Assembly: GCF_000143415.4 (NCBI RefSeq)
Contig: NW_003314290.1
Location: 1,413,244 to 1,477,243 of the forward strand
Length of the DNA: 64,000 nucleotides
Reading direction: 5' to 3'
DNA from: Selaginella moellendorffii
Lineage: Eukaryota; Plantae; Lycopodiophyta
A program made the translations under genes and the position numbers. Of the stretch, positions 18,103 through 31,750 are shown one piece after another. Below the pieces are notes generated by a model, which worked only from the letters and a program-made list of their open reading frames with translations, had not been told where the DNA came from and did no database searches. Within the stretch, counting starts at the first letter, position 1. Each line of letters starts with the position of its first letter.

Positions 18103-18246
18103 CTCCAATTTAATATTAATCCAAGCCAAAAAATTAATGAAATGCCACGTCATCTCAAAAGGTTACGGAACAGTATAAAAATCCCTCTTTAGAACCCTTG
18201 CTCGCCCCTTTTGCGTAAGAATAGACGCGCTCATTTCTTCGGAGCT

Positions 18247-19026
18247 ATGGCGTGTGCGGCGACTGTTGTTATGCCGGAGTGGGTGACCGCACACTACGAC
18301 GTTCTTCGTGAGCTTGGGCGAGGCGCGTACGGTGGAGTGTTCGAGCTGCGGGAGAAGTCGAGGTGGATCAAGAAGAAAAAGGTGGCGTGTAAGATACTGG
18401 ACGTTGAGAGGGAGAAATCTCAAAGCCATGAAGCGGCGATAATGAAGAAGCTTCATAACCTTCACGGAGTGGTGTGCCTTAAAAAGGCGCACTGCGATTC
18501 AACGTGTTCCTGCATGGTTATGGAATTGTGCGAGTGCGACCTAGTCACGGCCATGGCCACCGGCGTGATCGAGTACGATAAGATCCAAATAGCCCAACAC
18601 TTTCGGCATCTCGTCAAGACAATCAAAGCAATGCATCACGCCGGAATTGTTCACCGGGATCTCAAGCCCGAGAACGTTTTGGTAACGAAGAAACGGGAGC
18701 TCAAGGTCGGCGATTTTGGCACGGCTGTGGAGATTGAAAAGGGAGGCAAGCTCCACGAGGTGACGGGCACCTGGAACTACATGGCCCCAGAGATGATATT
18801 CCAGGGAAGCTACGATGAGAGGGTGGACGTGTACGCGTTGGGACTCATCCTTTACTTCATGCTAGAGCTAAAGACTCCCGAAGATCGGAAGATAGATTTC
18901 CAACAGTGCCCAGCCGCGGCGATGGATCTTATCAACAAGATGATCGACAATGATCCGGCAAAGAGAATAACACTGGACGAAGCCTTGAGGCACCCTTTCT
19001 TGCAACACCACCACAAGGGATACTAA
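18247..19026 (+). CDS. Intronless Ser/Thr protein kinase (CAMK/CDPK-like catalytic domain only)
   Basis: GRGAYGGV, VACK, HRDLKPEN, DFG, GTWNYMAPE, DVYALG and DPAKRIT in a single ORF. Confidence 0.88.
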   Translation: MACAATVVMPEWVTAHYDVLRELGRGAYGGVFELREKSRWIKKKKVACKILDVEREKSQSHEAAIMKKLHNLHGVVCLKKAHCDSTCSCMVMELCECDLVTAMATGVIEYDKIQIAQHFRHLVKTIKAMHHAGIVHRDLKPENVLVTKKRELKVGDFGTAVEIEKGGKLHEVTGTWNYMAPEMIFQGSYDERVDVYALGLILYFMLELKTPEDRKIDFQQCPAAAMDLINKMIDNDPAKRITLDEALRHPFLQHHHKGY

Positions 19027-19161
19027 ACAGTTGTATGAAACGAAAAACTATACTATGTGTATGTATAAAAGGCTTACCTCAAGAGATTTCGATTGCCATA
19101 TTCTTCATCCATTCTAGTAAAAAGTTAGAATGGTTTTCTTGAATGAATGGGAAACTCACCA

Positions 19162-22100
19162 CTAGTGGTGGACCATTTCTTTGTACAAAGTGCTTCTCTG
19201 TACCGGAACTCGTCCCATGGAATGGATGAGCTCCTTAATCGCCGAGGCTGTAAGTTCTTCACCTAGTTTCGCAGAATTATATCAAAGATATGAATGCAGA
19301 GCTTTCTATTTACCATGTAAAGCCCCTGCCGCTTTTGAGATGCTCTCGTTCATCAAGCAGCCGCCCATGTCGTTACAGCCAACAGCCAAAAGGAACTGAG
19401 CTCCATCGGCTCCCATTTTCACCCAGGAAGCCTGCAACGTTGAAGGAAAAAATACGTTAAACTCTAGCAATACATCGATAGTACCTGTATATTTGTGATG
19501 TGGGGATGCAGCACCAGACGAGAGACTGCATGCATGAGGACGCATTCCCTTCTTGTTGGCCCCTTTCTCGCCCGGCCTTTGACAAAAATTGGAGCCTAGA
19601 GAAGCAGTATGGTCAGAAAAGAAAGAGCTTTCAAACAACGTCTCAAACCTGCATGTGTACAAACGGTAGTGGCACAAACTCTGTGAAGCCGCCGGTTTTC
19701 TTCTGTAGGCTTTTAATGAGTTGCAGATGCGTTGCCCTGAAAGTGAACGTACTTTGAACCAGCACAAGAATGAGCCGAGAATTGAAGTCCTACCAGTGAG
19801 ACGGACAGTCCATATGTCCGAACATAATGGTTGATGTAGTCTTCAATCCAATACTATGAGCAGCTTCCATCACCTAGTAAAAATCTTGGCAAGTTTCGAT
19901 ATGGAACTCGAACACGCATTACCTCGAGCCACTGGTTTGTTTTGAGTTTGTCAGGACACAAAACGTTTCGCACCTCGTCGTCTAAGATCTGCTACCATCA
20001 CTGATCAAGTCATACAAGCACACCGAAATTTGTTACCTCGGCTGCAGTTCCAGGAAGAGAACCAAGTCCAGCGGCCTTCAACTGCACAAGGAACTCTTCA
20101 ACACTGGAAGCCAGAGAATTAAAATAAACCGAGCCACGGACGTTCACATCTCGACAATTGAGTACCTCATGTTGCTGGTTGAAGCACCTTGGTAAACTTC
20201 CAAAGGCGAGAATGCATGCACGTGGATACCAGGCACCGCTGATTTCACAGCTTTCAGAATTTCCAAGTATGTTTCGCCAGTGTAATCGGGGTGAATTCCT
20301 CCCTGAAACAGCTCGTCGCATCTCATACCCTGAAGATCTTGTTACCTGCATGCATACTTCCGTCGCTCCTCTTTCACGGGCTTCAATAGTCCTACGAGAT
20401 ATTTCTTCCAGTGACAAGCTACGAAAGGACATAATTAGAACTGAGAGCATCAAAGCAATCAAGTATCAACCTGTATGGCTTTCCTCTTAGATTCTCGTTC
20501 TGCTTTCCTTTGCTGATACATACAAGTTTAAAAGGTCTTATTTCACAGTGCGACAAGATACCTGAAAGCGCAGAATTGGCATTTGTAGCTACAAACGTTG
20601 GTATAGTTGATGTTTCTGTTTACAACATATGTTACCTGAAAATACAATCAAAATGTGCGCGCGTCAAAACTTCGTTACCTTATTCCCATTTACTGATTCA
20701 CGTAGCCTATTCGCTGAAGAACATATATAGTCAAAATCTGGTCCCATGGAATAGAATAGCATAGTTATTTCATCCTGACACAAGAAATGGATAAGTCAGT
20801 GAGTCGACAAAGCAACAATGTACTCTGGTCAAATCCTCTCCTGCCACGCCCTTATCCACTATATATTCCACACGGCTGCTTGCTCTCGCGGCTATTAAAA
20901 AAAAACACAAACAGAAGTTTAACAGACGCAAGGAAAACTGAAGCCTACGTACAGGCATTGCACGAAACATTTCCCTGTATGCCGACATAAACAGATGAGG
21001 TTGTAGCGTTGTTCATTTGACTCCAGTCAGTGGTAGCATTGCAACCTGGTGACCAAGGATCCGCTCGACCGTAGCCCAGACTGTTAGAGCTTGCGAGTGC
21101 ATATCGCAAGACGTTGGGATCCTGGCAAAACGTAAGTCAAGAGGAAGTGGACAAGCTTTTCCAAAAACAACGCTATACCAGCCACGACGAAAAGTTGCGA
21201 ATATATGACGGGTATACAGGCAGCCTTGGAACGAGTAGTTTGTCGCACTGCATTGTCGCACTGGCTAAGCTTCTGATGTGCGGCCACGGTAGCTGCAAAA
21301 CAGGCAATCAGAGTATGACATTAGAAGAAATGATAAAAGAAAAGAGAATCAAAGAAAGGAAGCACCTCGGGATTCACCCAATCTCTTGTTAAGGGAGAAA
21401 TTCCGCCCCAGTCGTTTATTCCTGCATTGATAAGAAGCTCCCACTCAACTCCTTCTTTTGTGTCATCTCTGCAACATCGTTAAAGTCCAGTGCAAACTGA
21501 GGTCATGGTTCACTTGCCTTGGTGTCAAGTTTGGTGGCGCTTGAATGCTCATGTCTGGACCGAATAAAATCCGTGCCATGGCTACAGTCCACAGGAGCTC
21601 GTCAATATTTGGCTCTGCTGCATTTTCCATTGGAGTGCCTTTCTTTGCTCGAAAGTTCTGAATGATGAGCTCCTGGATATGGCCATATTTTTCATGAACC
21701 CCACGTAGGAGCAGCAAGCTCTTGATTCGATCGGACCTGGTTTCACCAATACCAACCAGCAGGCCGGACGTGAAAGGCACCTTCAGCTCACCTGAACAAA
21801 AGTTTAGAGTATAGAAAGGAAAGAGTTAACAAATGAAAAGTTACATGCCTGCGATCGCAATAGTTGCAATCCGGGCGGAGGGAACTTTGTCTGGACAATT
21901 AAAGTGCGGGCCGCCGGGTTCAGCGAGGCTCGAAGCAGTCGACTCAAGCATCAAGCCCTGACTAACGGAGACGCTTCTCAGAAGTGACACGTCTTTTTTG
22001 CACATCACCCCCGCATTGACATGAGCAAGAAGTCCAGTTTTCTCGAGCACTAACTTAGCAGCCTCAGCAACATACTCAATAGTCGTGGAGTGGCCCAGTG

Positions 22101-22690
22101 ACGCAAGCTGCAAAAGCACAAAGGAAGAAAGAAAGTAAAGGTCATTGCAGAAACATGAAAGTCCTCCTTTTTAAAAACTTCGAAGAACTTACCTCTTCTT
22201 TGGCCTGTGGATAAAGAAGTTCTGGCTTGTCCCCGAGTGTAAAGAGTGCCTCCGTGCATCCCAGCTCCGCAGCGCGGCTAGCAACGCTCAAAACTTCGTC
22301 CAGAGACATATAAACCGGCTTCCCAGGCTTTGGAGCTCGAGCAAAAGCGCAGTAGCCACAGGAATCCCGGCATGCTCTCGTCAAAGGAATAAATGCCTTT
22401 GGCGAGAAAGTGATGATACTAGAGTCGGGCCTAGAGTCACGGATTGCGGCAGCGGAGGTCATGAGCAATCGGAGATCGAGGCCACCGACGTCGAGCAAGA
22501 TTCTCTCATCAATCTGGGGATAGCTCTCACCTTTTGCGCAGCGCTGCACTATCAGTGCCAGAGATTCCTTGGCGGAAGAAGCCTCGCATCTGATTCTACT
22601 CCTCCTCGTCGAAATGCTGGTGGCAGCAATGCTGGCAAGATGGAGGTAGCCTGGATTCCGATGGCGCAGCGCCTGGCACACGTCTAACAT
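19162..22690 (-). CDS. fbiC: Bifunctional FO (7,8-didemethyl-8-hydroxy-5-deazariboflavin) synthase, CofG-CofH fusion (FbiC type), multi-exon, predicted organellar transit peptide
   Basis: CofG half: [85 protein letters not shown]. CofH half: [96 protein letters not shown], ending [14 protein letters not shown]. Confidence 0.93.
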
Positions 22691-25600
22691 TGCTTGATCG
22701 AGCGAGTGTTAACCCAAGTTACAGTGCTTTTTCTTGGTTCCCATCACATGCATTTTTAATAAAAGGTAGGTGTTTAAAGTGTCACTTCAACAACTGTGAA
22801 GTAATAGTTAAGCCCCCATGTGATTGAGCTTGACACAAACCACAAAAATATTTTGAGGATATTTTATAGTATATTTGACGATGACAATGCTCATTAGCCA
22901 ATCTTTTGTCTTGATTTTGAGTTTGTCTTATGTTCAACTTTGCCAACCCTAGCTTGTTTTGCATATCCTCCAGGAAATCATAAGCATGAAATACTCAAAC
23001 CAAACCCAAACTCAAACTCACAAGAGACTTAGGTTTATAATAGTACATTGGCATAAATGAAAATATATTAATTGCCAATTGATGAACACTATTGTGAGTA
23101 AATTGAAGCAAAGGCAAGTACTTCTCCCATGCTCCCTATCTAGTTAAGTTTTCTACAAAAGACTTTAGCATATTTTCCAATAAGTGATTCATATGCTCTG
23201 ACTGCCTATATGAATGTGGATGCTCACCACTACTCATGCTCAGGTTAGTCTCTAGCTTCTCAAATACCATTTGCTAAAACCTGGATGTGAATTTGGGATC
23301 CCAATCATTCACAATATCATATGGCAAACCATAAAGATTGAATAACTAGTTTACTAAGCAAGTTCAAAAGTTTTAATAGTCATCTTCATTGGGAAGAAGT
23401 GAGCCATCTTTGTCAAATGATCCATAATAACCTAAATAACATTATTTCCTTGCAAAATCTTAGGTAAATCAATGATAAAGTTCATTAAAATGTTATTTTA
23501 TTTATTCTTGGGTACACATAGAGGATGATAGAGGCTAATGAGCTTCTGATGATCAACTTTACTGTTGGCAAGTCAAACAATCACGTATATACTTCTCAAC
23601 ATTTGATTTTATCCAAAGCAAAAAAAAAAAATGCCTCTTCACCAACATATACATTTTTAGTACCCTCAGATGACACTTGGCACATCATAACATTCAACCA
23701 AAATCTATTTGATGAATTTGTTAATACAAAGAACCACCACACATCCCTTCTTCGCTAGAATTTCATTTTATGTCTCAAATGATACAAATTTGTCACCCTT
23801 CAAATCTATAGAGGTGTGTCTTAACAAAACCTTTGTGTGAAATATCAATAATAAAGGAGTTGAAGTCAACAAACTTCTTAAGTTCATCCAAGAGATTGTT
23901 GGATACCTTCATGAATGAAATAGAATTTTACTATCCTGAATAATACATCTGCCACTTTATTGTCACCTCCGTGCTTGTACTGAATCTTAATAGACATTTC
24001 TTGCAGGAACTTTTACCAACGAGCAAGGTAACCTCAAAAATCCTTTTGCCAACTGAAATACTAGAGAAATTAATGATTTGAATCCACATGGAAGTGCGAT
24101 CCATATAAATAATAAAGCCATTCCTTCACAGCATACAACTCCTTATCTCGAGTAAGTTAATTCTGCTGTGTAGCATCAAACTTATGGCTCATATATGCAA
24201 AAGGATGCCCAACTTGAAGCAATACAACTCTAATAGCAATATCACTTGCATCTATCTCGACCACAAAAAGTTTCTTAGGAATAAAAATTTTAATACAATA
24301 TTACTTCAAATGTTGAAATGCCACTTCACACTTCTCATCCCAATTATGAATAGTAGTATATTTGAACTTGTTTTGGAGAAGATGGGTCAAGAGGGCTGTT
24401 ATCTCTAAAAAGTCCTTCACAAATCATTGAAAAACTTTAGCCATATCAAGGAATCTACAAAGATCGTGCACTATTGAAAGTATAAGCCAATTATCCACGA
24501 CCTGAATCTTTATGGATCAGCTCTCACTCTATGTATGGAAATCAAATGCTCGAAATATCCAATTTGCTCCAAGAAAAACTCACACTTTAATAACTTCGAG
24601 TAGAGTTTGTTGTCCCTCAAAAGTTGCAAAATACTTCACACATACATCTCATGTTCCTCCATTGAAGAGATGAATACTAGAATATCATCAAAATAATCAA
24701 TTGCAAACTTTCCCAATAAGGCTGTAGAACTTGATTCATCAATCTCTGAAAAGTTACACAAGCATTTGTCAAACCAAATGGCATCACTAAAAACTCATAG
24801 TAACCCATTCTTGTCCGAAATGCAATTTTTGGATCCTTTGGCTTGACATAAATTTGATGATACTCTTACCTCAAATCAATCTTCAAAAAATATCAAGCAT
24901 CATGAAGACGATCGAACAAATCATTGATATAAGGGATTGGGAATATATTCTTCACCGTCCTATCATTCAATTCCTTTTAGTTCACATAAAGACACCATAT
25001 ACCATCTTTCTTTTTGACCATCACCACTGGAGCAACCCAAGAAGACATACTGATCTGTAACTACCCTTTCCAAAGGTATTCAGCAAGCTACTTATTAATC
25101 TCCTCATCTTTAGCGGGATTAGTATGAGTTGGTTGTTGCTGATAAGGAGTAGTTTTAGGAACCAAGTCAATCTCATGCTGAATTTCACGTTTTTGAGGCA
25201 AACCATTAGGCAATTTATTTGGAAATACATCACGGAACTCCTCCTGAATGAAATCCACCCAAGCCCTAGACCCACAAATGTACTCCAAATCAGATATGAT
25301 CATATTAGAAAAAAATGGGTACACTACAAAAGAATTAGCTATCTCATATGTGGAAGTCACCAACTCCAAAGCATTAATCAATGGAATATTACTATTGTCT
25401 ATCTTAATAATCTTTTTCACAGTGCCACCAACTTTAATATCTAGGATATTATACTCTCAATTGATTCTTAGCTTCCTATCATAAAACCATTCCTTCCCAA
25501 AAATAACATTTTTACGACCAAGATCCATAATTTGGAACGAATGATGGTCAAGAATCCCTTGAACCATCAAAGGAACACTCAGAGCCCATTTACCATAAAC

Positions 25601-29821: not shown

Positions 29822-30481
29822 TACCAGTGAAAAATAGAAATATAATATAAAAAATAAGTCTTTCATACGTATATATAGCTTTCCACATTTAAAGACCAAC
29901 TTCTTTAAGAAGATTAGGGTTCAACTTTTTGGGGCATTGAATTGGATGGACATTGCCAAAAAGAAAAGTATGCACAGGATCAAATCTCGCCCACGTAGCT
30001 CTCATGGCTTTTGGATGAAGAGAGTGAGGACCACTCCAACCAAATTCATCGCCCTGCGTGAAGGGATCTCTCGCATATACACGACAAATGCTCTACTTTT
30101 TCCCAGCAAACCCAGCACATCTTGCGATTAAACAAGGTCTGTGCGTTAGCGTGTATAGTGTCGTGGGTGAGGACAAAGACGCTCTTTTGAGGGTGGAAGC
30201 TCGCTCTCCAGTAGCTTTGCAGCTTTTTCGTTTAAATGCTGGCCACTGGGGCCTCTGGTGTGTTAATTCTCGAAAAGGAGGAAAGAGGCAGCTATCAATC
30301 ACGGCCCATGCCTGGAGAGCGCTAGAAATCGCGCGAGCGAGCGAGTTTGGTGCATCATGTCTTGGCTGTGATCCTAAAATTCCTGGCTCATGGCCGCGAT
30401 GGAGTGTTTAGATTTCTCCTTCTAGCGTTGTGGAGTTTGGAGGGAAGGATCCTTCCTATCAGTGGAGTACCAAATTGGATC

Positions 30482-31750
30482 ATGATCCGGGTAGAGGACG
30501 GCAAGGAGTGTCCGCCAAGCAAGCGCCCCCGGCCAGATCGTCAAGGATCGTCACCAATTCTGGATCCCCTGCTTCCAGGCCTCCCGGATGATCTAGCGCT
30601 GCTGTGCCTGGCTCGGGTCGATCGAATCTCCGCGCTGTGGGGAGTGGCGAGGTCCTGGCAGCGCCGCCTGTACGATTGCCCTTTCTTCTTCCCCGCTCGC
30701 GCGAAGCTGGGGCTGCCGGGCGGATTTAACTGGCTCTACGTTCTCATCGCGTCCAAGAACACCAATAACAGCTTGGATTTGGATGATCATCGCACCGGAG
30801 GCGCCGCCGCCTTCCAGTGGTACGCTTTCGATCCTTTGGCGGCCAAATGGCATCGCCTCCCTCCCATGCCACACGACGTGAGATTTGAGCTCTCGCGCCG
30901 TGGATTCTTGCCGGGCCCTTATTCGCTCTCCTCCATCCAATGCGCCAGCACTAGCGACAAACTCATCGTTGTCGCCGGGACACGTACCGCCGGCGCCGGC
31001 ACCCAGACAGCACCATCATCACGCGCCGCCACCGCCAGCGTACCGCGGGCGCCACCTGGCGGTATGCCGCCGGTGGAGCCTGCGCTGGACAGCCCGCTCG
31101 TCTTCCACGTGCGCACCGCCAGCTGGAGCCGGGGCCCACGGTACACCGTCCCGCGCCGCTGGTGCAGCTGCGGCACAACCGCCGGCGGCCAGCTGCTCGT
31201 CGCCAGCGGCTGCGGAAACGAGTGGGACCTGCGTACCGCGCGGCAGGCGGAGATGTGGGACACCAACGGCGGCGCCGTCGCGGGGTGGCGCGCGGTACAG
31301 CCGCTCGAGTCTTCCAAGCTCAGCCGCGAGGCGACGCCGGCGGTGGAGTTTGACGGTAAGCTCTATATGGTGAGCGCGCGCAGTGGGCTGGTGTTTAATC
31401 CGGGGAGCGAGACGTGGGAGCCCATGCAGAGCGGACTGACGCGCGGATGGAACGGGCCCGGCGTCACCTCCGGCGGTAAGCTGTTCGTCATGGATGATAC
31501 CGCCGGGCGGATCAAGGCGTACGACGGCGGTACGGAGAGCTGGGTTTGCGTGCTCGAGGACAAGAGGCTCAAGAACTTGAGGAATGTGGTGGCGGCGCAT
31601 GGGAAGATCTGTGGATCGGTAGGGGGATTGATCAGGGTCGTAGACATTGGGAAGAATCCGGTGGAGTTTAGGGACATTGAAATTCCTGTGGAGGGACAGA
31701 TCATGGGGTTGCAAATTCTCTCCAAATTGGAGGGAAGTGTGGAATTGTGA
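30482..31750 (+). CDS. F-box/kelch-repeat protein, intronless
   Basis: LLPGLPDDLALLCLARV F-box followed by kelch-like repeats (AFDPLAAKWHRLPPMP, LVASGCG, GKLYMV, GKLFVMD). Confidence 0.88.
   Translation: MIRVEDGKECPPSKRPRPDRQGSSPILDPLLPGLPDDLALLCLARVDRISALWGVARSWQRRLYDCPFFFPARAKLGLPGGFNWLYVLIASKNTNNSLDLDDHRTGGAAAFQWYAFDPLAAKWHRLPPMPHDVRFELSRRGFLPGPYSLSSIQCASTSDKLIVVAGTRTAGAGTQTAPSSRAATASVPRAPPGGMPPVEPALDSPLVFHVRTASWSRGPRYTVPRRWCSCGTTAGGQLLVASGCGNEWDLRTARQAEMWDTNGGAVAGWRAVQPLESSKLSREATPAVEFDGKLYMVSARSGLVFNPGSETWEPMQSGLTRGWNGPGVTSGGKLFVMDDTAGRIKAYDGGTESWVCVLEDKRLKNLRNVVAAHGKICGSVGGLIRVVDIGKNPVEFRDIEIPVEGQIMGLQILSKLEGSVEL

What the first reader, a model, noticed from the sequence alone, without database searches (positions are those of the whole stretch)
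19162..22690. Deazaflavin (FO) synthase, a CofG-CofH fusion with a transit-peptide-like leader, in a land-plant nuclear genome
Seen: a spliced gene with two radical-SAM CxxxCxxC motifs (CRDSCGYC and CSYKCQFC), the CofG and CofH conserved blocks, and a Ser/Arg/Ala-rich leader ([37 protein letters not shown]). No lesions were found in the exons I traced. Known: FbiC/CofGH makes FO from tyrosine and the riboflavin precursor 5-amino-6-ribitylamino-uracil. FO is the F420 precursor in archaea and actinobacteria and the photolyase antenna (8-HDF) in cyanobacteria and green algae. I do not know the pathway from flowering plants. Inference: this probable vascular plant makes a deazaflavin in the plastid, implying an FO-dependent photolyase/cryptochrome antenna system or an unrecognised FO redox role that later plant lineages lost. 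The spliceosomal introns and flanking plant genes argue against contamination.
Basis: partly seen in the sequence, partly recalled or inferred. Interest (0 to 1): 0.85.

Follow-up and report, generated by a model that had tools for sequence, protein, structure and literature searches.

The report
FO (deazaflavin) synthase gene in Selaginella
This is an intact, expressed 19-exon nuclear gene of the spikemoss Selaginella moellendorffii for the two-domain enzyme that makes the deazaflavin FO, most likely as a light-harvesting pigment for DNA-repair photolyases. The enzyme type is already known from green algae and mosses, so the gene is ordinary, though its survival into ferns and conifers is little noticed.

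Summary
On the minus strand, 22690-19162, lie 19 exons that splice into an unbroken 845-aa ORF. That ORF is 100% identical to the public protein [quoted passage not shown].

**Expression:** spliced contigs from three separate studies (probably RNA) carry the predicted junctions. This includes both GC-AG introns.

**Family:** the protein passes NCBI's curated cut-offs for bifunctional CofGH, CofG and CofH, and fails those for MqnC and MqnE. Both CxxxCxxC motifs are present.

**Descent:** the gene tree follows the plant species tree, from chlorophytes and Mesotaenium through liverworts, mosses, lycophytes and ferns to conifers. Eighteen intron positions are shared with Marchantia and Physcomitrium. 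The gene is therefore anciently nuclear and vertically inherited, not a contaminant.

**Leader:** it is short, basic, poor in acidic residues and predicted disordered, like the leaders of all streptophyte orthologues. The target compartment is untested.

**Novelty is low.** A fused FO synthase (Chlamydomonas PHR1) is characterised, and Franz et al. 2018 report the 8-HDF pathway in mosses.

**What adds a little:** orthologues occur in ferns, another lycophyte, Cryptomeria and Taxus, and no angiosperm hit was found. The clade sits among fused bacterial CofGH enzymes, but no cyanobacterial sequence could be compared.

The scan had already noted this same stretch (s1-337412). It also noted a CofE-like gene elsewhere in this genome (s1-353425).

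The parts
19162..22690 (-). Complete coding region of the FO synthase gene: 19 exons, 845 aa. Exons on the minus strand: 22690-22193; 22107-21849; 21791-21518; 21468-21366; 21292-21179; 21121-20953; 20891-20824; 20774-20679; 20635-20562; 20512-20471; 20418-20346; 20302-20166; 20103-20037; 19988-19923; 19873-19794; 19736-19649; 19595-19485; 19431-19314; 19262-19162.
   Evidence: model; 100% identical to RefSeq protein P0303; spliced contigs in three runs carry the junctions.
22580..22690 (-). N-terminal leader, residues 1-37, not present in bacterial homologues. Candidate organelle-targeting peptide.
   Evidence: NF006687 alignment starts at residue 38. The leader has 16% R+K, 5% D+E and 16% S+T. 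All streptophyte orthologues have 37-104 aa non-conserved leaders against 2-7 aa in bacteria. pLDDT is below 50 for residues 1-39.
21107..22411 (-). CofG domain (residues 94-421), a radical-SAM domain, spread over exons 1-6.
   Evidence: TIGR03550 472 bits against a cut-off of 213. The exon pieces are collinear with the model.
22349..22372 (-). First [4Fe-4S]/SAM cluster motif, CxxxCxxC (C107, C111, C114).
   Evidence: These columns are invariant in alignment A1.
20830..21106 (-). Inter-domain linker (residues 422-493), poorly conserved.
   Evidence: Low conservation in A1. pLDDT dips around residues 450-456.
19177..20829 (-). CofH domain (residues 494-841), a radical-SAM domain plus the CofH_C region, spread over exons 7-19.
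   Evidence: TIGR03551 569.5 bits against 374; NF005609 504 against 426; MqnC 388 is below its 428 cut-off and MqnE 346 is below 434. Pfam Radical_SAM and CofH_C. Closest solved fold is MqnE 6xi9, TM 0.85.
20570..20593 (-). Second cluster motif, CxxxCxxC (C542, C546, C549).
21792..21848 (-). Intron 2, with a GC donor (GC-AG).
   Evidence: donor gcatgt. Contig pieces 21848-22107 and 21518-21790 are joined in runs X4, X5 and X8.
21469..21517 (-). Intron 3, with a GC donor (GC-AG).
   Evidence: donor gcaagt. Spliced contigs.
19114..19159 (-). Probable 46-nt GT-AG intron in the 3' UTR, starting 2 nt after the stop codon.
   Evidence: Joint 19114/19162 in runs X4 and X5 (tables 5 and 5c), read together with the sequence. 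The exact ends are my reading of an ambiguous alignment.
18999..19077 (-). Possible second 3'-UTR intron, seen in one contig of run X5. It would carry the 3' UTR into the end of the convergent kinase gene.
   Evidence: The loose end at 19078 matches 18971-18998 (table 7). GT..AG on the minus strand, read. Support is weak: a single contig.

Best explanation
The gene encodes the Selaginella moellendorffii orthologue of the green-lineage bifunctional FO synthase (Chlamydomonas PHR1 type, bacterial FbiC/CofGH type).

Mechanism, from established enzymology and not tested here: the C-terminal CofH domain uses a [4Fe-4S] cluster and SAM to fragment L-tyrosine. It attaches the 4-hydroxybenzyl unit to 5-amino-6-ribitylamino-uracil. 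The N-terminal CofG domain, with its own cluster and a second SAM, closes the ring to give FO (7,8-didemethyl-8-hydroxy-5-deazariboflavin, also called 8-HDF).

The roughly 37-residue leader most likely sends the protein into an organelle. The plastid is most likely, because both substrates and Fe-S cluster assembly are there.

FO then most likely serves as the blue-light antenna of the plant's photolyases (class II CPD and/or 6-4), as in Chlamydomonas.

The gene entered the green lineage before chlorophytes and streptophytes split. It has been inherited vertically into bryophytes, lycophytes, ferns and conifers, and appears to be missing from angiosperms.

Shown here: gene structure, expression, family membership, orthology and vertical descent. 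Inferred: catalysis, compartment and the antenna role.
For: An intact 845-aa ORF from 19 exons, identical to RefSeq P0303. Spliced contigs in three runs from three studies. NF006687 1053 bits against a cut-off of 1018; CofG and CofH domain models well above cut-off; MqnC and MqnE below theirs. Both Cys triads and about 250 further columns are invariant across plants, algae and bacteria. The AlphaFold model has pLDDT 82 with two radical-SAM barrels, and the best PDB matches are MqnE, HydE, HydG, BioB and ThiH. The Chloroplastida clade has 100% SH-aLRT support with a species-tree-like order, and Selaginella sits among vascular plants. Exon lengths 259, ~275, ~100, 114 ... 96, 74, 42, 73, 137, 67, 66, 80, 88, 111, 118 are shared with Marchantia and Physcomitrium. 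Leader features are shared by all streptophyte orthologues. Papers: PHR1 is a bifunctional FO synthase needed for photoreactivation, CraCRY binds 8-HDF, and the pathway is kept in mosses (PMC6125616). [quoted passage not shown]
Against: No enzyme assay, FO measurement or localisation exists for this protein. I could not retrieve Selaginella photolyases, so the consumer of FO is not shown. The leader is short and could equally be mitochondrial. Differences from a second haplotype or strain are not strongly biased to silent sites: 9 synonymous, 15 non-synonymous and 13 non-coding among those listed. The window allele has Ala at residue 194, where nearly all homologues and the other allele have Pro. 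The run types are guesses ('RNA?'); the spliced form itself is what indicates RNA.
Confidence: 0.82

Rival explanations
1. The enzyme feeds a redox cofactor pathway (F420 or a related deazaflavin cofactor) in the plastid rather than, or as well as, a photolyase antenna.
For: An earlier scan note reports an expressed cyanobacterial-type CofE-like gene elsewhere in this genome (s1-353425; not checked by me). In bacteria FbiC often lies next to cofC, cofD and cofE.
Against: The F420 review states there is no evidence that eukaryotes make F420 (PMC8498797). The scan's notes contain nothing on CofC, CofD or FbiA in this genome, although absence of a note proves little. CofE-like genes also occur in cyanobacteria, which are known from the literature for FO rather than F420 (my knowledge, not checked). 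The tested eukaryotic role of FO is as an antenna (PMC6125616).
Confidence: 0.06
2. The gene is a decaying relic: still transcribed and open, but no longer needed, on its way to the loss seen in angiosperms.
For: The non-synonymous to synonymous count between alleles is only mildly skewed (15:9). The window allele has A194 at a nearly invariant Pro. The Selaginella branch is the longest among land plants (0.45).
Against: There are no lesions in 2538 nt. All invariant family columns are kept, including both Cys triads. The curated equivalog cut-off is passed. All 18 coding introns are spliced as modelled, and transcripts appear in several studies. Six of the 15 non-synonymous differences lie in the leader region, residues 31-56.
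Confidence: 0.07
3. It is a menaquinone (futalosine pathway) radical-SAM enzyme, MqnC or MqnE, or another relative, mistaken for CofGH.
For: The CofH half is homologous to MqnC and MqnE (388 and 346 bits). The closest solved structure is MqnE.
Against: The MqnC and MqnE scores are below their curated cut-offs, while CofH (569 bits) and the bifunctional model (1053 bits) are above theirs. The N-terminal half matches CofG specifically (472 against 213). In the rooted CofH tree MqnC sits on a very long branch outside all CofH sequences.
Confidence: 0.01
4. It is bacterial contamination or a recent horizontal transfer in the assembly, not a plant gene.
For: The nearest non-eukaryotic relatives are bacterial fused CofGH at 51-58% identity.
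Against: The gene has 18 coding spliceosomal introns whose positions are shared with a liverwort and a moss. The transcripts are spliced. The gene tree tracks plant phylogeny. The flanks hold eukaryotic genes: a protein kinase and a Kelch-repeat ORF. The orthologues lie on chromosome-scale plant contigs.
Confidence: 0.01

Closest known systems
Chlamydomonas reinhardtii PHR1, the bifunctional FO synthase required for photoreactivation (Petersen & Ronan 2010, as summarised in PMC6125616)
   Same: A eukaryotic, nuclear-encoded, single-chain CofG-CofH fusion of the green lineage. Chlorophyte orthologues (Coccomyxa, Botryococcus, Myrmecia, Tetraselmis) form one clade with the Selaginella protein at 100% SH-aLRT.
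   Different: The Chlamydomonas sequence itself was not among the proteins I retrieved, so orthology is inferred through other chlorophytes. The Selaginella protein is untested. Land plants lack the animal-like CRY that binds 8-HDF in Chlamydomonas (PMC8591175), so the clients would be the class II CPD and 6-4 photolyases.
Bacterial fused FO synthase (FbiC / CofGH; NCBIfam NF006687)
   Same: The same domain order, both Cys triads, full-length alignment (profile positions 12-837) and a score above the equivalog cut-off. Identity is 51-58% to enzymes of Pseudomonadota, Chloroflexota, Acidobacteriota and some Actinomycetota. The green clade nests inside this group at 99% support.
   Different: The plant gene has 18 introns in the coding region, a 37-aa leader and no neighbouring cof/fbi genes. 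The classical Rhodococcus FbiC is more distant: 48% identity over the CofH half, and outside the 99% clade.
Split CofG + CofH of archaea, cyanobacteria and some bacteria (TIGR03550, TIGR03551)
   Same: Each half passes the corresponding domain model.
   Different: Here the two are fused. Haloarchaeal CofH is only about 36% identical, and the split bacterial CofH of Leisingera and Thermomicrobium lies outside the clade holding the plant enzyme. No cyanobacterial sequence could be obtained for comparison.
MqnE aminofutalosine synthase (PDB 6xi9)
   Same: The closest solved structure to the CofH half (E 5e-45 by sequence; TM 0.85). It has the same radical-SAM barrel and C-terminal region.
   Different: A different substrate and pathway. 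The family cut-off is not reached (346 against 434 bits).

Membership tests
Bifunctional FO synthase CofGH / FbiC | Whole-protein score at or above the curated equivalog cut-off of NF006687 | tested here: met
   1053 bits against a cut-off of 1018, one stretch, residues 38-842 on profile positions 12-837 of 849.
Bifunctional FO synthase CofGH / FbiC | Two radical-SAM domains, each with its own CxxxCxxC cluster motif, CofG N-terminal and CofH C-terminal | tested here: met
   C107/C111/C114 and C542/C546/C549. CofG covers 94-421 and CofH 494-841. Pfam finds Radical_SAM twice plus CofH_C.
Bifunctional FO synthase CofGH / FbiC | Scores better as CofG and CofH than as the paralogous MqnC, MqnE, HydE, BioB or PylB families | tested here: met
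   CofH 569.5 (cut-off 374) against MqnC 388 (cut-off 428) and MqnE 346 (cut-off 434). CofG 472 (cut-off 213) against BioB 74 and HmdB 68.
Bifunctional FO synthase CofGH / FbiC | Radical-SAM partial or full TIM-barrel fold in both halves | tested here: met
   The AlphaFold model has pLDDT 82 and pTM 0.86. Foldseek's best matches are MqnE, HydE, BioB, HydG, PylB and ThiH.
Bifunctional FO synthase CofGH / FbiC | Makes FO from L-tyrosine and 5-amino-6-ribitylamino-uracil with two SAM | not testable with these tools
   This needs heterologous expression or an in-vitro assay.
Green-lineage FO synthase (PHR1 orthologue group) | Falls in one clade with chlorophyte and streptophyte FO synthases, with species-tree-like branching and shared intron positions | tested here: met
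   Clade support 100%; embryophytes 99%; liverworts, mosses, ferns and conifers each starred. Exon lengths match Marchantia and Physcomitrium over 17 exons. The characterised Chlamydomonas protein itself was not in the set.
Plastid-targeted protein | Cleavable N-terminal transit peptide and plastid location | tested here: inconclusive
   A 37-aa non-conserved, basic, acid-poor, disordered leader is present. No targeting predictor or experiment was available, and a mitochondrial presequence is not excluded.
MqnC / MqnE (futalosine pathway) | Score at or above the curated cut-offs of TIGR03699 / TIGR03700 | tested here: not met
   388 is below 428.1 and 346 is below 434.55.
F420 biosynthesis pathway | Presence of CofC/FbiD, CofD/FbiA and CofE/FbiB in the same genome | not tested
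   I could read only this 64-kb window. An earlier scan note reports a CofE-like gene (s1-353425), and no note mentions CofC or CofD.

The most novel reading that the evidence does not exclude
FO (8-HDF) biosynthesis did not stop at mosses. It ran through the whole non-flowering land-plant grade and is still active in seed plants such as Cryptomeria and Taxus, so deazaflavin-boosted photoreactivation was lost only on the way to, or within, angiosperms. Separately, the green-lineage enzyme may descend from a fused bacterial CofGH acquired by gene transfer rather than from the split cofG/cofH of the cyanobacterial plastid ancestor.
Probability: 0.5. Interest if true: 0.45.

Novelty: new member of a known kind. 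Interest (0 to 1): 0.3.

Why it matters
On its own the gene is an expected housekeeping accessory of UV repair in a non-flowering plant.

Its wider value is as a marker. Papers available to me, up to November 2026, still say 8-HDF is made only by microbes, algae and mosses (PMC13769073; PMC6125616). The public protein sets, however, show intact orthologues in lycophytes, ferns and conifers and none in angiosperms.

That gives a clean comparative system. One can ask why flowering plants gave up the antenna, and what replaced it in their class II photolyases. According to PMC13769073, the Arabidopsis enzyme binds none of the known antennae.

It also bears on which foods supply 8-HDF to animals whose photolyases use it.

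Tried and rejected
1. **First protein search.** I used the closest full-length representative (P0133). It was proteobacterial and returned only bacteria, so that search was largely wasted. The fern hit P0001 then led to the plant set.

2. **Cyanobacterial CofG/CofH.** I tried to obtain these to test an endosymbiotic against a horizontal origin.
   - Ten stand-alone CofG-like representatives carried no names.
   - Two plasmid searches gave proteobacteria, actinobacteria, haloarchaea and MqnC, but no cyanobacteria.
   - The origin question stays open.

3. **Key papers not available.** Kiontke et al. 2014 (PMC4094076) and Petersen & Ronan 2010 (PMC2952248) are not in the library. My recollection is that the 2014 abstract already predicts 8-HDF use in 'bryophyta and pteridophyta'. 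This is unverified.

4. **Literature searches.** Searches pairing deazaflavin or FO synthase with Selaginella, ferns or gymnosperms found nothing beyond Franz et al. 2018.

5. **Selaginella photolyases.** The 8-HDF pocket check was therefore not done.

6. **Chromera.** Its position is unstable: with Actinomycetota in the full-length tree and inside the chlorophytes in the CofH tree. It sits on a long branch and I draw no conclusion from it.

7. **CofH tree.** The 'careful' search did not finish in time. The tree reported is the quick one, with SH-aLRT support only.

8. **Rejected readings.** Contamination, MqnC/MqnE and pseudogene were rejected; see the rival explanations.
Full report
**1. What is in the sequence**

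The six-frame translation of 19000-22750 shows CofG- and CofH-like pieces scattered over all three minus-strand frames. Joining them at canonical splice sites gives 19 exons and a CDS of 2538 nt (845 aa), from the ATG at 22690 to the TAG at 19164-19162, with no lesion.
- Introns are 43-85 nt long.
- Sixteen are GT-AG. Introns 2 and 3 have GC donors.

**2. Is the model real and expressed?**

Contigs from public runs were laid on 19000-22800; the run types are guesses.
- Three probable RNA runs from three different studies (X4, X5, X8) carry one spliced contig each. The joints and pieces the tool printed (15 of 21 joints, and selected contig pieces) match the modelled exon ends, including the exons on either side of both GC-AG introns.
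- A DNA run (X1) carries the unspliced locus with 36 differences and 4 gaps over 3497 nt.
- Transcript contigs end 5-50 nt upstream of the ATG, and that stretch has no other ATG, so the N-terminus is well placed.
- Two further joints suggest one or two small introns in the 3' UTR, at 19159-19114 and possibly 19077-18999. The second would extend the 3' UTR antisense into the end of the convergent kinase ORF.

**3. Whose gene is it?**

The model is 100% identical over all 845 residues to P0303, NCBI 'uncharacterized protein LOC9645841 [Selaginella moellendorffii]'. The window is therefore from the lycophyte S. moellendorffii, and the gene is already annotated but unnamed. The tiny introns fit that compact genome. 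The flanks hold a protein-kinase ORF and a Kelch-repeat ORF. Other first-stage notes report INTS1 and a gypsy element in the window (I did not check these).

**4. Family membership**

Ten separate exon pieces all hit NCBIfam NF006687 (bifunctional FO biosynthesis protein CofGH), collinearly from profile position 12 to 807. The whole protein scores as follows:

| Model | Bits | Curated cut-off | Result |
|---|---|---|---|
| NF006687, bifunctional CofGH | 1053 | 1018 | pass |
| TIGR03550, CofG | 472 | 213 | pass |
| TIGR03551, CofH | 569.5 | 374 | pass |
| TIGR03699, MqnC | 388 | 428 | fail |
| TIGR03700, MqnE | 346 | 434 | fail |

- Pfam finds two Radical_SAM stretches and CofH_C.
- Both Cys triads, and about 250 other columns, are invariant in a 16-sequence alignment of plants, algae and bacteria.
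- An AlphaFold model (pLDDT 82, pTM 0.86) has two alpha/beta barrels. Residues 1-39 are disordered.
- Foldseek's best solved matches are MqnE (TM 0.85 on the target), HydE, biotin synthase, HydG, PylB and ThiH.
- No CofG, CofH or FbiC structure appears in the PDB copy.

**5. Relatives and descent**

The search with the fern query P0001 found orthologues in these groups:
- Ferns: Adiantum, Ceratopteris.
- A second lycophyte: Diphasiastrum.
- Mosses: Sphagnum, Physcomitrium.
- Liverworts: Calypogeia, Riccia, Marchantia.
- The zygnematophyte Mesotaenium.
- Many chlorophytes.
- The conifer Cryptomeria japonica.

Several of these are already called 'FO synthase' in UniRef.

Searching with the Cryptomeria protein added Taxus chinensis (a partial model). 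It also put at the top a 900-aa protein (P0302, first seen) from transcript contigs of SRR8274992/3. No angiosperm appeared. The 900-aa protein groups with the conifers and scores 1069 bits on NF006687. Any angiosperm orthologue of normal length should have ranked above the bacterial hits that fill the rest of the list. This is reasonable, though not conclusive, evidence of absence.

The full-length maximum-likelihood tree (quick search, SH-aLRT support) makes Chloroplastida one clade at 100%. Inside it:
- Mesotaenium is sister to the land plants (98%).
- The embryophytes are supported at 99%.
- Liverworts, mosses, ferns and conifers are each supported at 97% or better.
- Selaginella sits among the vascular plants.

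Exact spliced mapping of the Marchantia and Physcomitrium proteins onto their loci gives 19 and 20 exons. Their lengths match Selaginella almost one for one: 259; 274/277; 103/100/94; 114/108; then 96, 74, 42, 73, 137, 67, 66, 80, 88, 111, 118 identical in all three. The intron positions therefore predate the split of bryophytes and vascular plants. Contamination or recent transfer is excluded.

**6. Bacterial affinities**

The best 80 of more than 600 matches in one genome per prokaryotic species are all fused CofGH genes at 51-58% identity. They come from Pseudomonadota, Chloroflexota (Ktedonobacteria), Acidobacteriota and some Actinomycetota.

In a CofH-domain tree rooted on MqnC, the green clade (98%) lies inside a 99% clade of these fused enzymes. 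Outside that clade fall the classical Rhodococcus FbiC, the split CofH of Leisingera and Thermomicrobium, and haloarchaeal CofH.

I could not obtain any cyanobacterial CofG or CofH. An origin by transfer of an already fused bacterial gene is therefore suggested, not shown.

**7. The leader**

Bacterial homologues begin 2-7 residues before the point that aligns with residue 38. Every streptophyte orthologue instead has a non-conserved extension of 37-104 residues. These extensions are basic (11-19% R+K), poor in acidic residues (3-10%) and fairly rich in Ser/Thr.

That is what organelle presequences look like. No predictor or experiment was available, so the compartment is inferred. The plastid is favoured because plant riboflavin-precursor and tyrosine synthesis and the SUF Fe-S machinery are plastidial; this is established plant biochemistry from my own knowledge.

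**8. Constraint**

The differences listed against the other allele or strain fall as 9 synonymous, 15 non-synonymous and 13 non-coding. Six of the non-synonymous ones lie in residues 31-56. This is only weak evidence of purifying selection within the species. The deep conservation described in sections 4 and 5 is the stronger argument. The window allele carries Ala194 where homologues and the other allele have Pro.

**9. What it most likely does**

By homology it makes FO. The CofH domain performs the tyrosine-fragmenting first half-reaction and the CofG domain the ring closure. [quoted passage not shown]

In Chlamydomonas the orthologous PHR1 is required for photoreactivation, and both the class II photolyase and the 6-4/aCRY protein use 8-HDF (PMC6125616). 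[quoted passage not shown]

An antenna role in Selaginella is thus the default reading, but I could not examine its photolyases. An F420-type redox role is unlikely. The review states that there is no evidence for F420 in eukaryotes. Only a CofE-like gene has been noted in this genome (s1-353425, unchecked), and no CofC or CofD has been noted.

**10. Novelty**

The kind of enzyme, its eukaryotic fused form and its presence in non-seed plants are known. This particular protein is public but unnamed, and it is not discussed in any paper I could search. A November 2026 paper still lists only microorganisms, algae and mosses as producers (PMC13769073).

From memory, and unverified because the paper is not in the library, Kiontke et al. 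2014 already predicted 8-HDF use 'from green microalgae to bryophyta and pteridophyta' from photolyase motifs.

The modest additions here are:
- gene-level evidence for lycophytes, ferns and two conifers;
- the apparent absence from angiosperms;
- the intron-position conservation;
- the placement among fused bacterial enzymes.

**Verdict:** a real, ordinary gene and a new member of a known kind.

Noticed in passing
window 18999-19159 (minus) and 18211-19026 (plus): The FO synthase mRNA seems to have one or two small 3'-UTR introns (19159-19114; possibly 19077-18999). After the second, its 3' UTR would run antisense into the last codons of the convergent, intronless protein-kinase ORF (Pkinase, 177 bits). 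This may be natural antisense overlap in a very compact genome.
   Followed up: partly
window 21792-21848 and 21469-21517: Two of the 18 coding introns use GC donors (GC-AG), and both are confirmed by spliced contigs. That is more than the roughly 1% usually quoted for plants. In my mapping the Physcomitrium orthologue also has one GC donor, at a different intron.
   Followed up: partly
window 22024-22026 (residue 194): The window allele encodes Ala where nearly all homologues have Pro. The other allele or strain, seen in DNA run X1, encodes Pro. This is one of 15 non-synonymous differences between the two.
   Followed up: partly
P0314 (Cryptomeria japonica), P0409 (Taxus chinensis), L081/L082 (P0302, SRR8274992/3): Seed plants keep the gene. 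There are chromosomal gene models in two conifers, plus a full-length 900-aa transcript-derived protein that passes the CofGH equivalog cut-off (1069 bits). The literature I could read says vascular or 'higher' plants lack the pathway.
   Followed up: partly
L001-L080 (genome-contig hits): Fused CofGH genes at 51-58% identity to the plant enzyme are widespread in Alpha-, Beta- and Gammaproteobacteria, Ktedonobacteria, Vicinamibacterales and Gaiellales/Rubrobacterales-type Actinomycetota. The classical Rhodococcus FbiC is more distant. The fused clade is phylogenetically mixed, which suggests much horizontal spread.
   Followed up: partly
P0066 (Chromera velia): An alveolate with a red-algal-derived plastid has a fused FO synthase. 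Its position jumps between Actinomycetota and chlorophytes depending on the alignment, and it sits on a long branch.
   Followed up: no
window 30347-31750 (plus): A long intronless ORF (467 aa) has Kelch repeats (Kelch_6, Kelch_FKB95-like) in a GC-rich stretch (57-59% GC at 30-34 kb).
   Followed up: no
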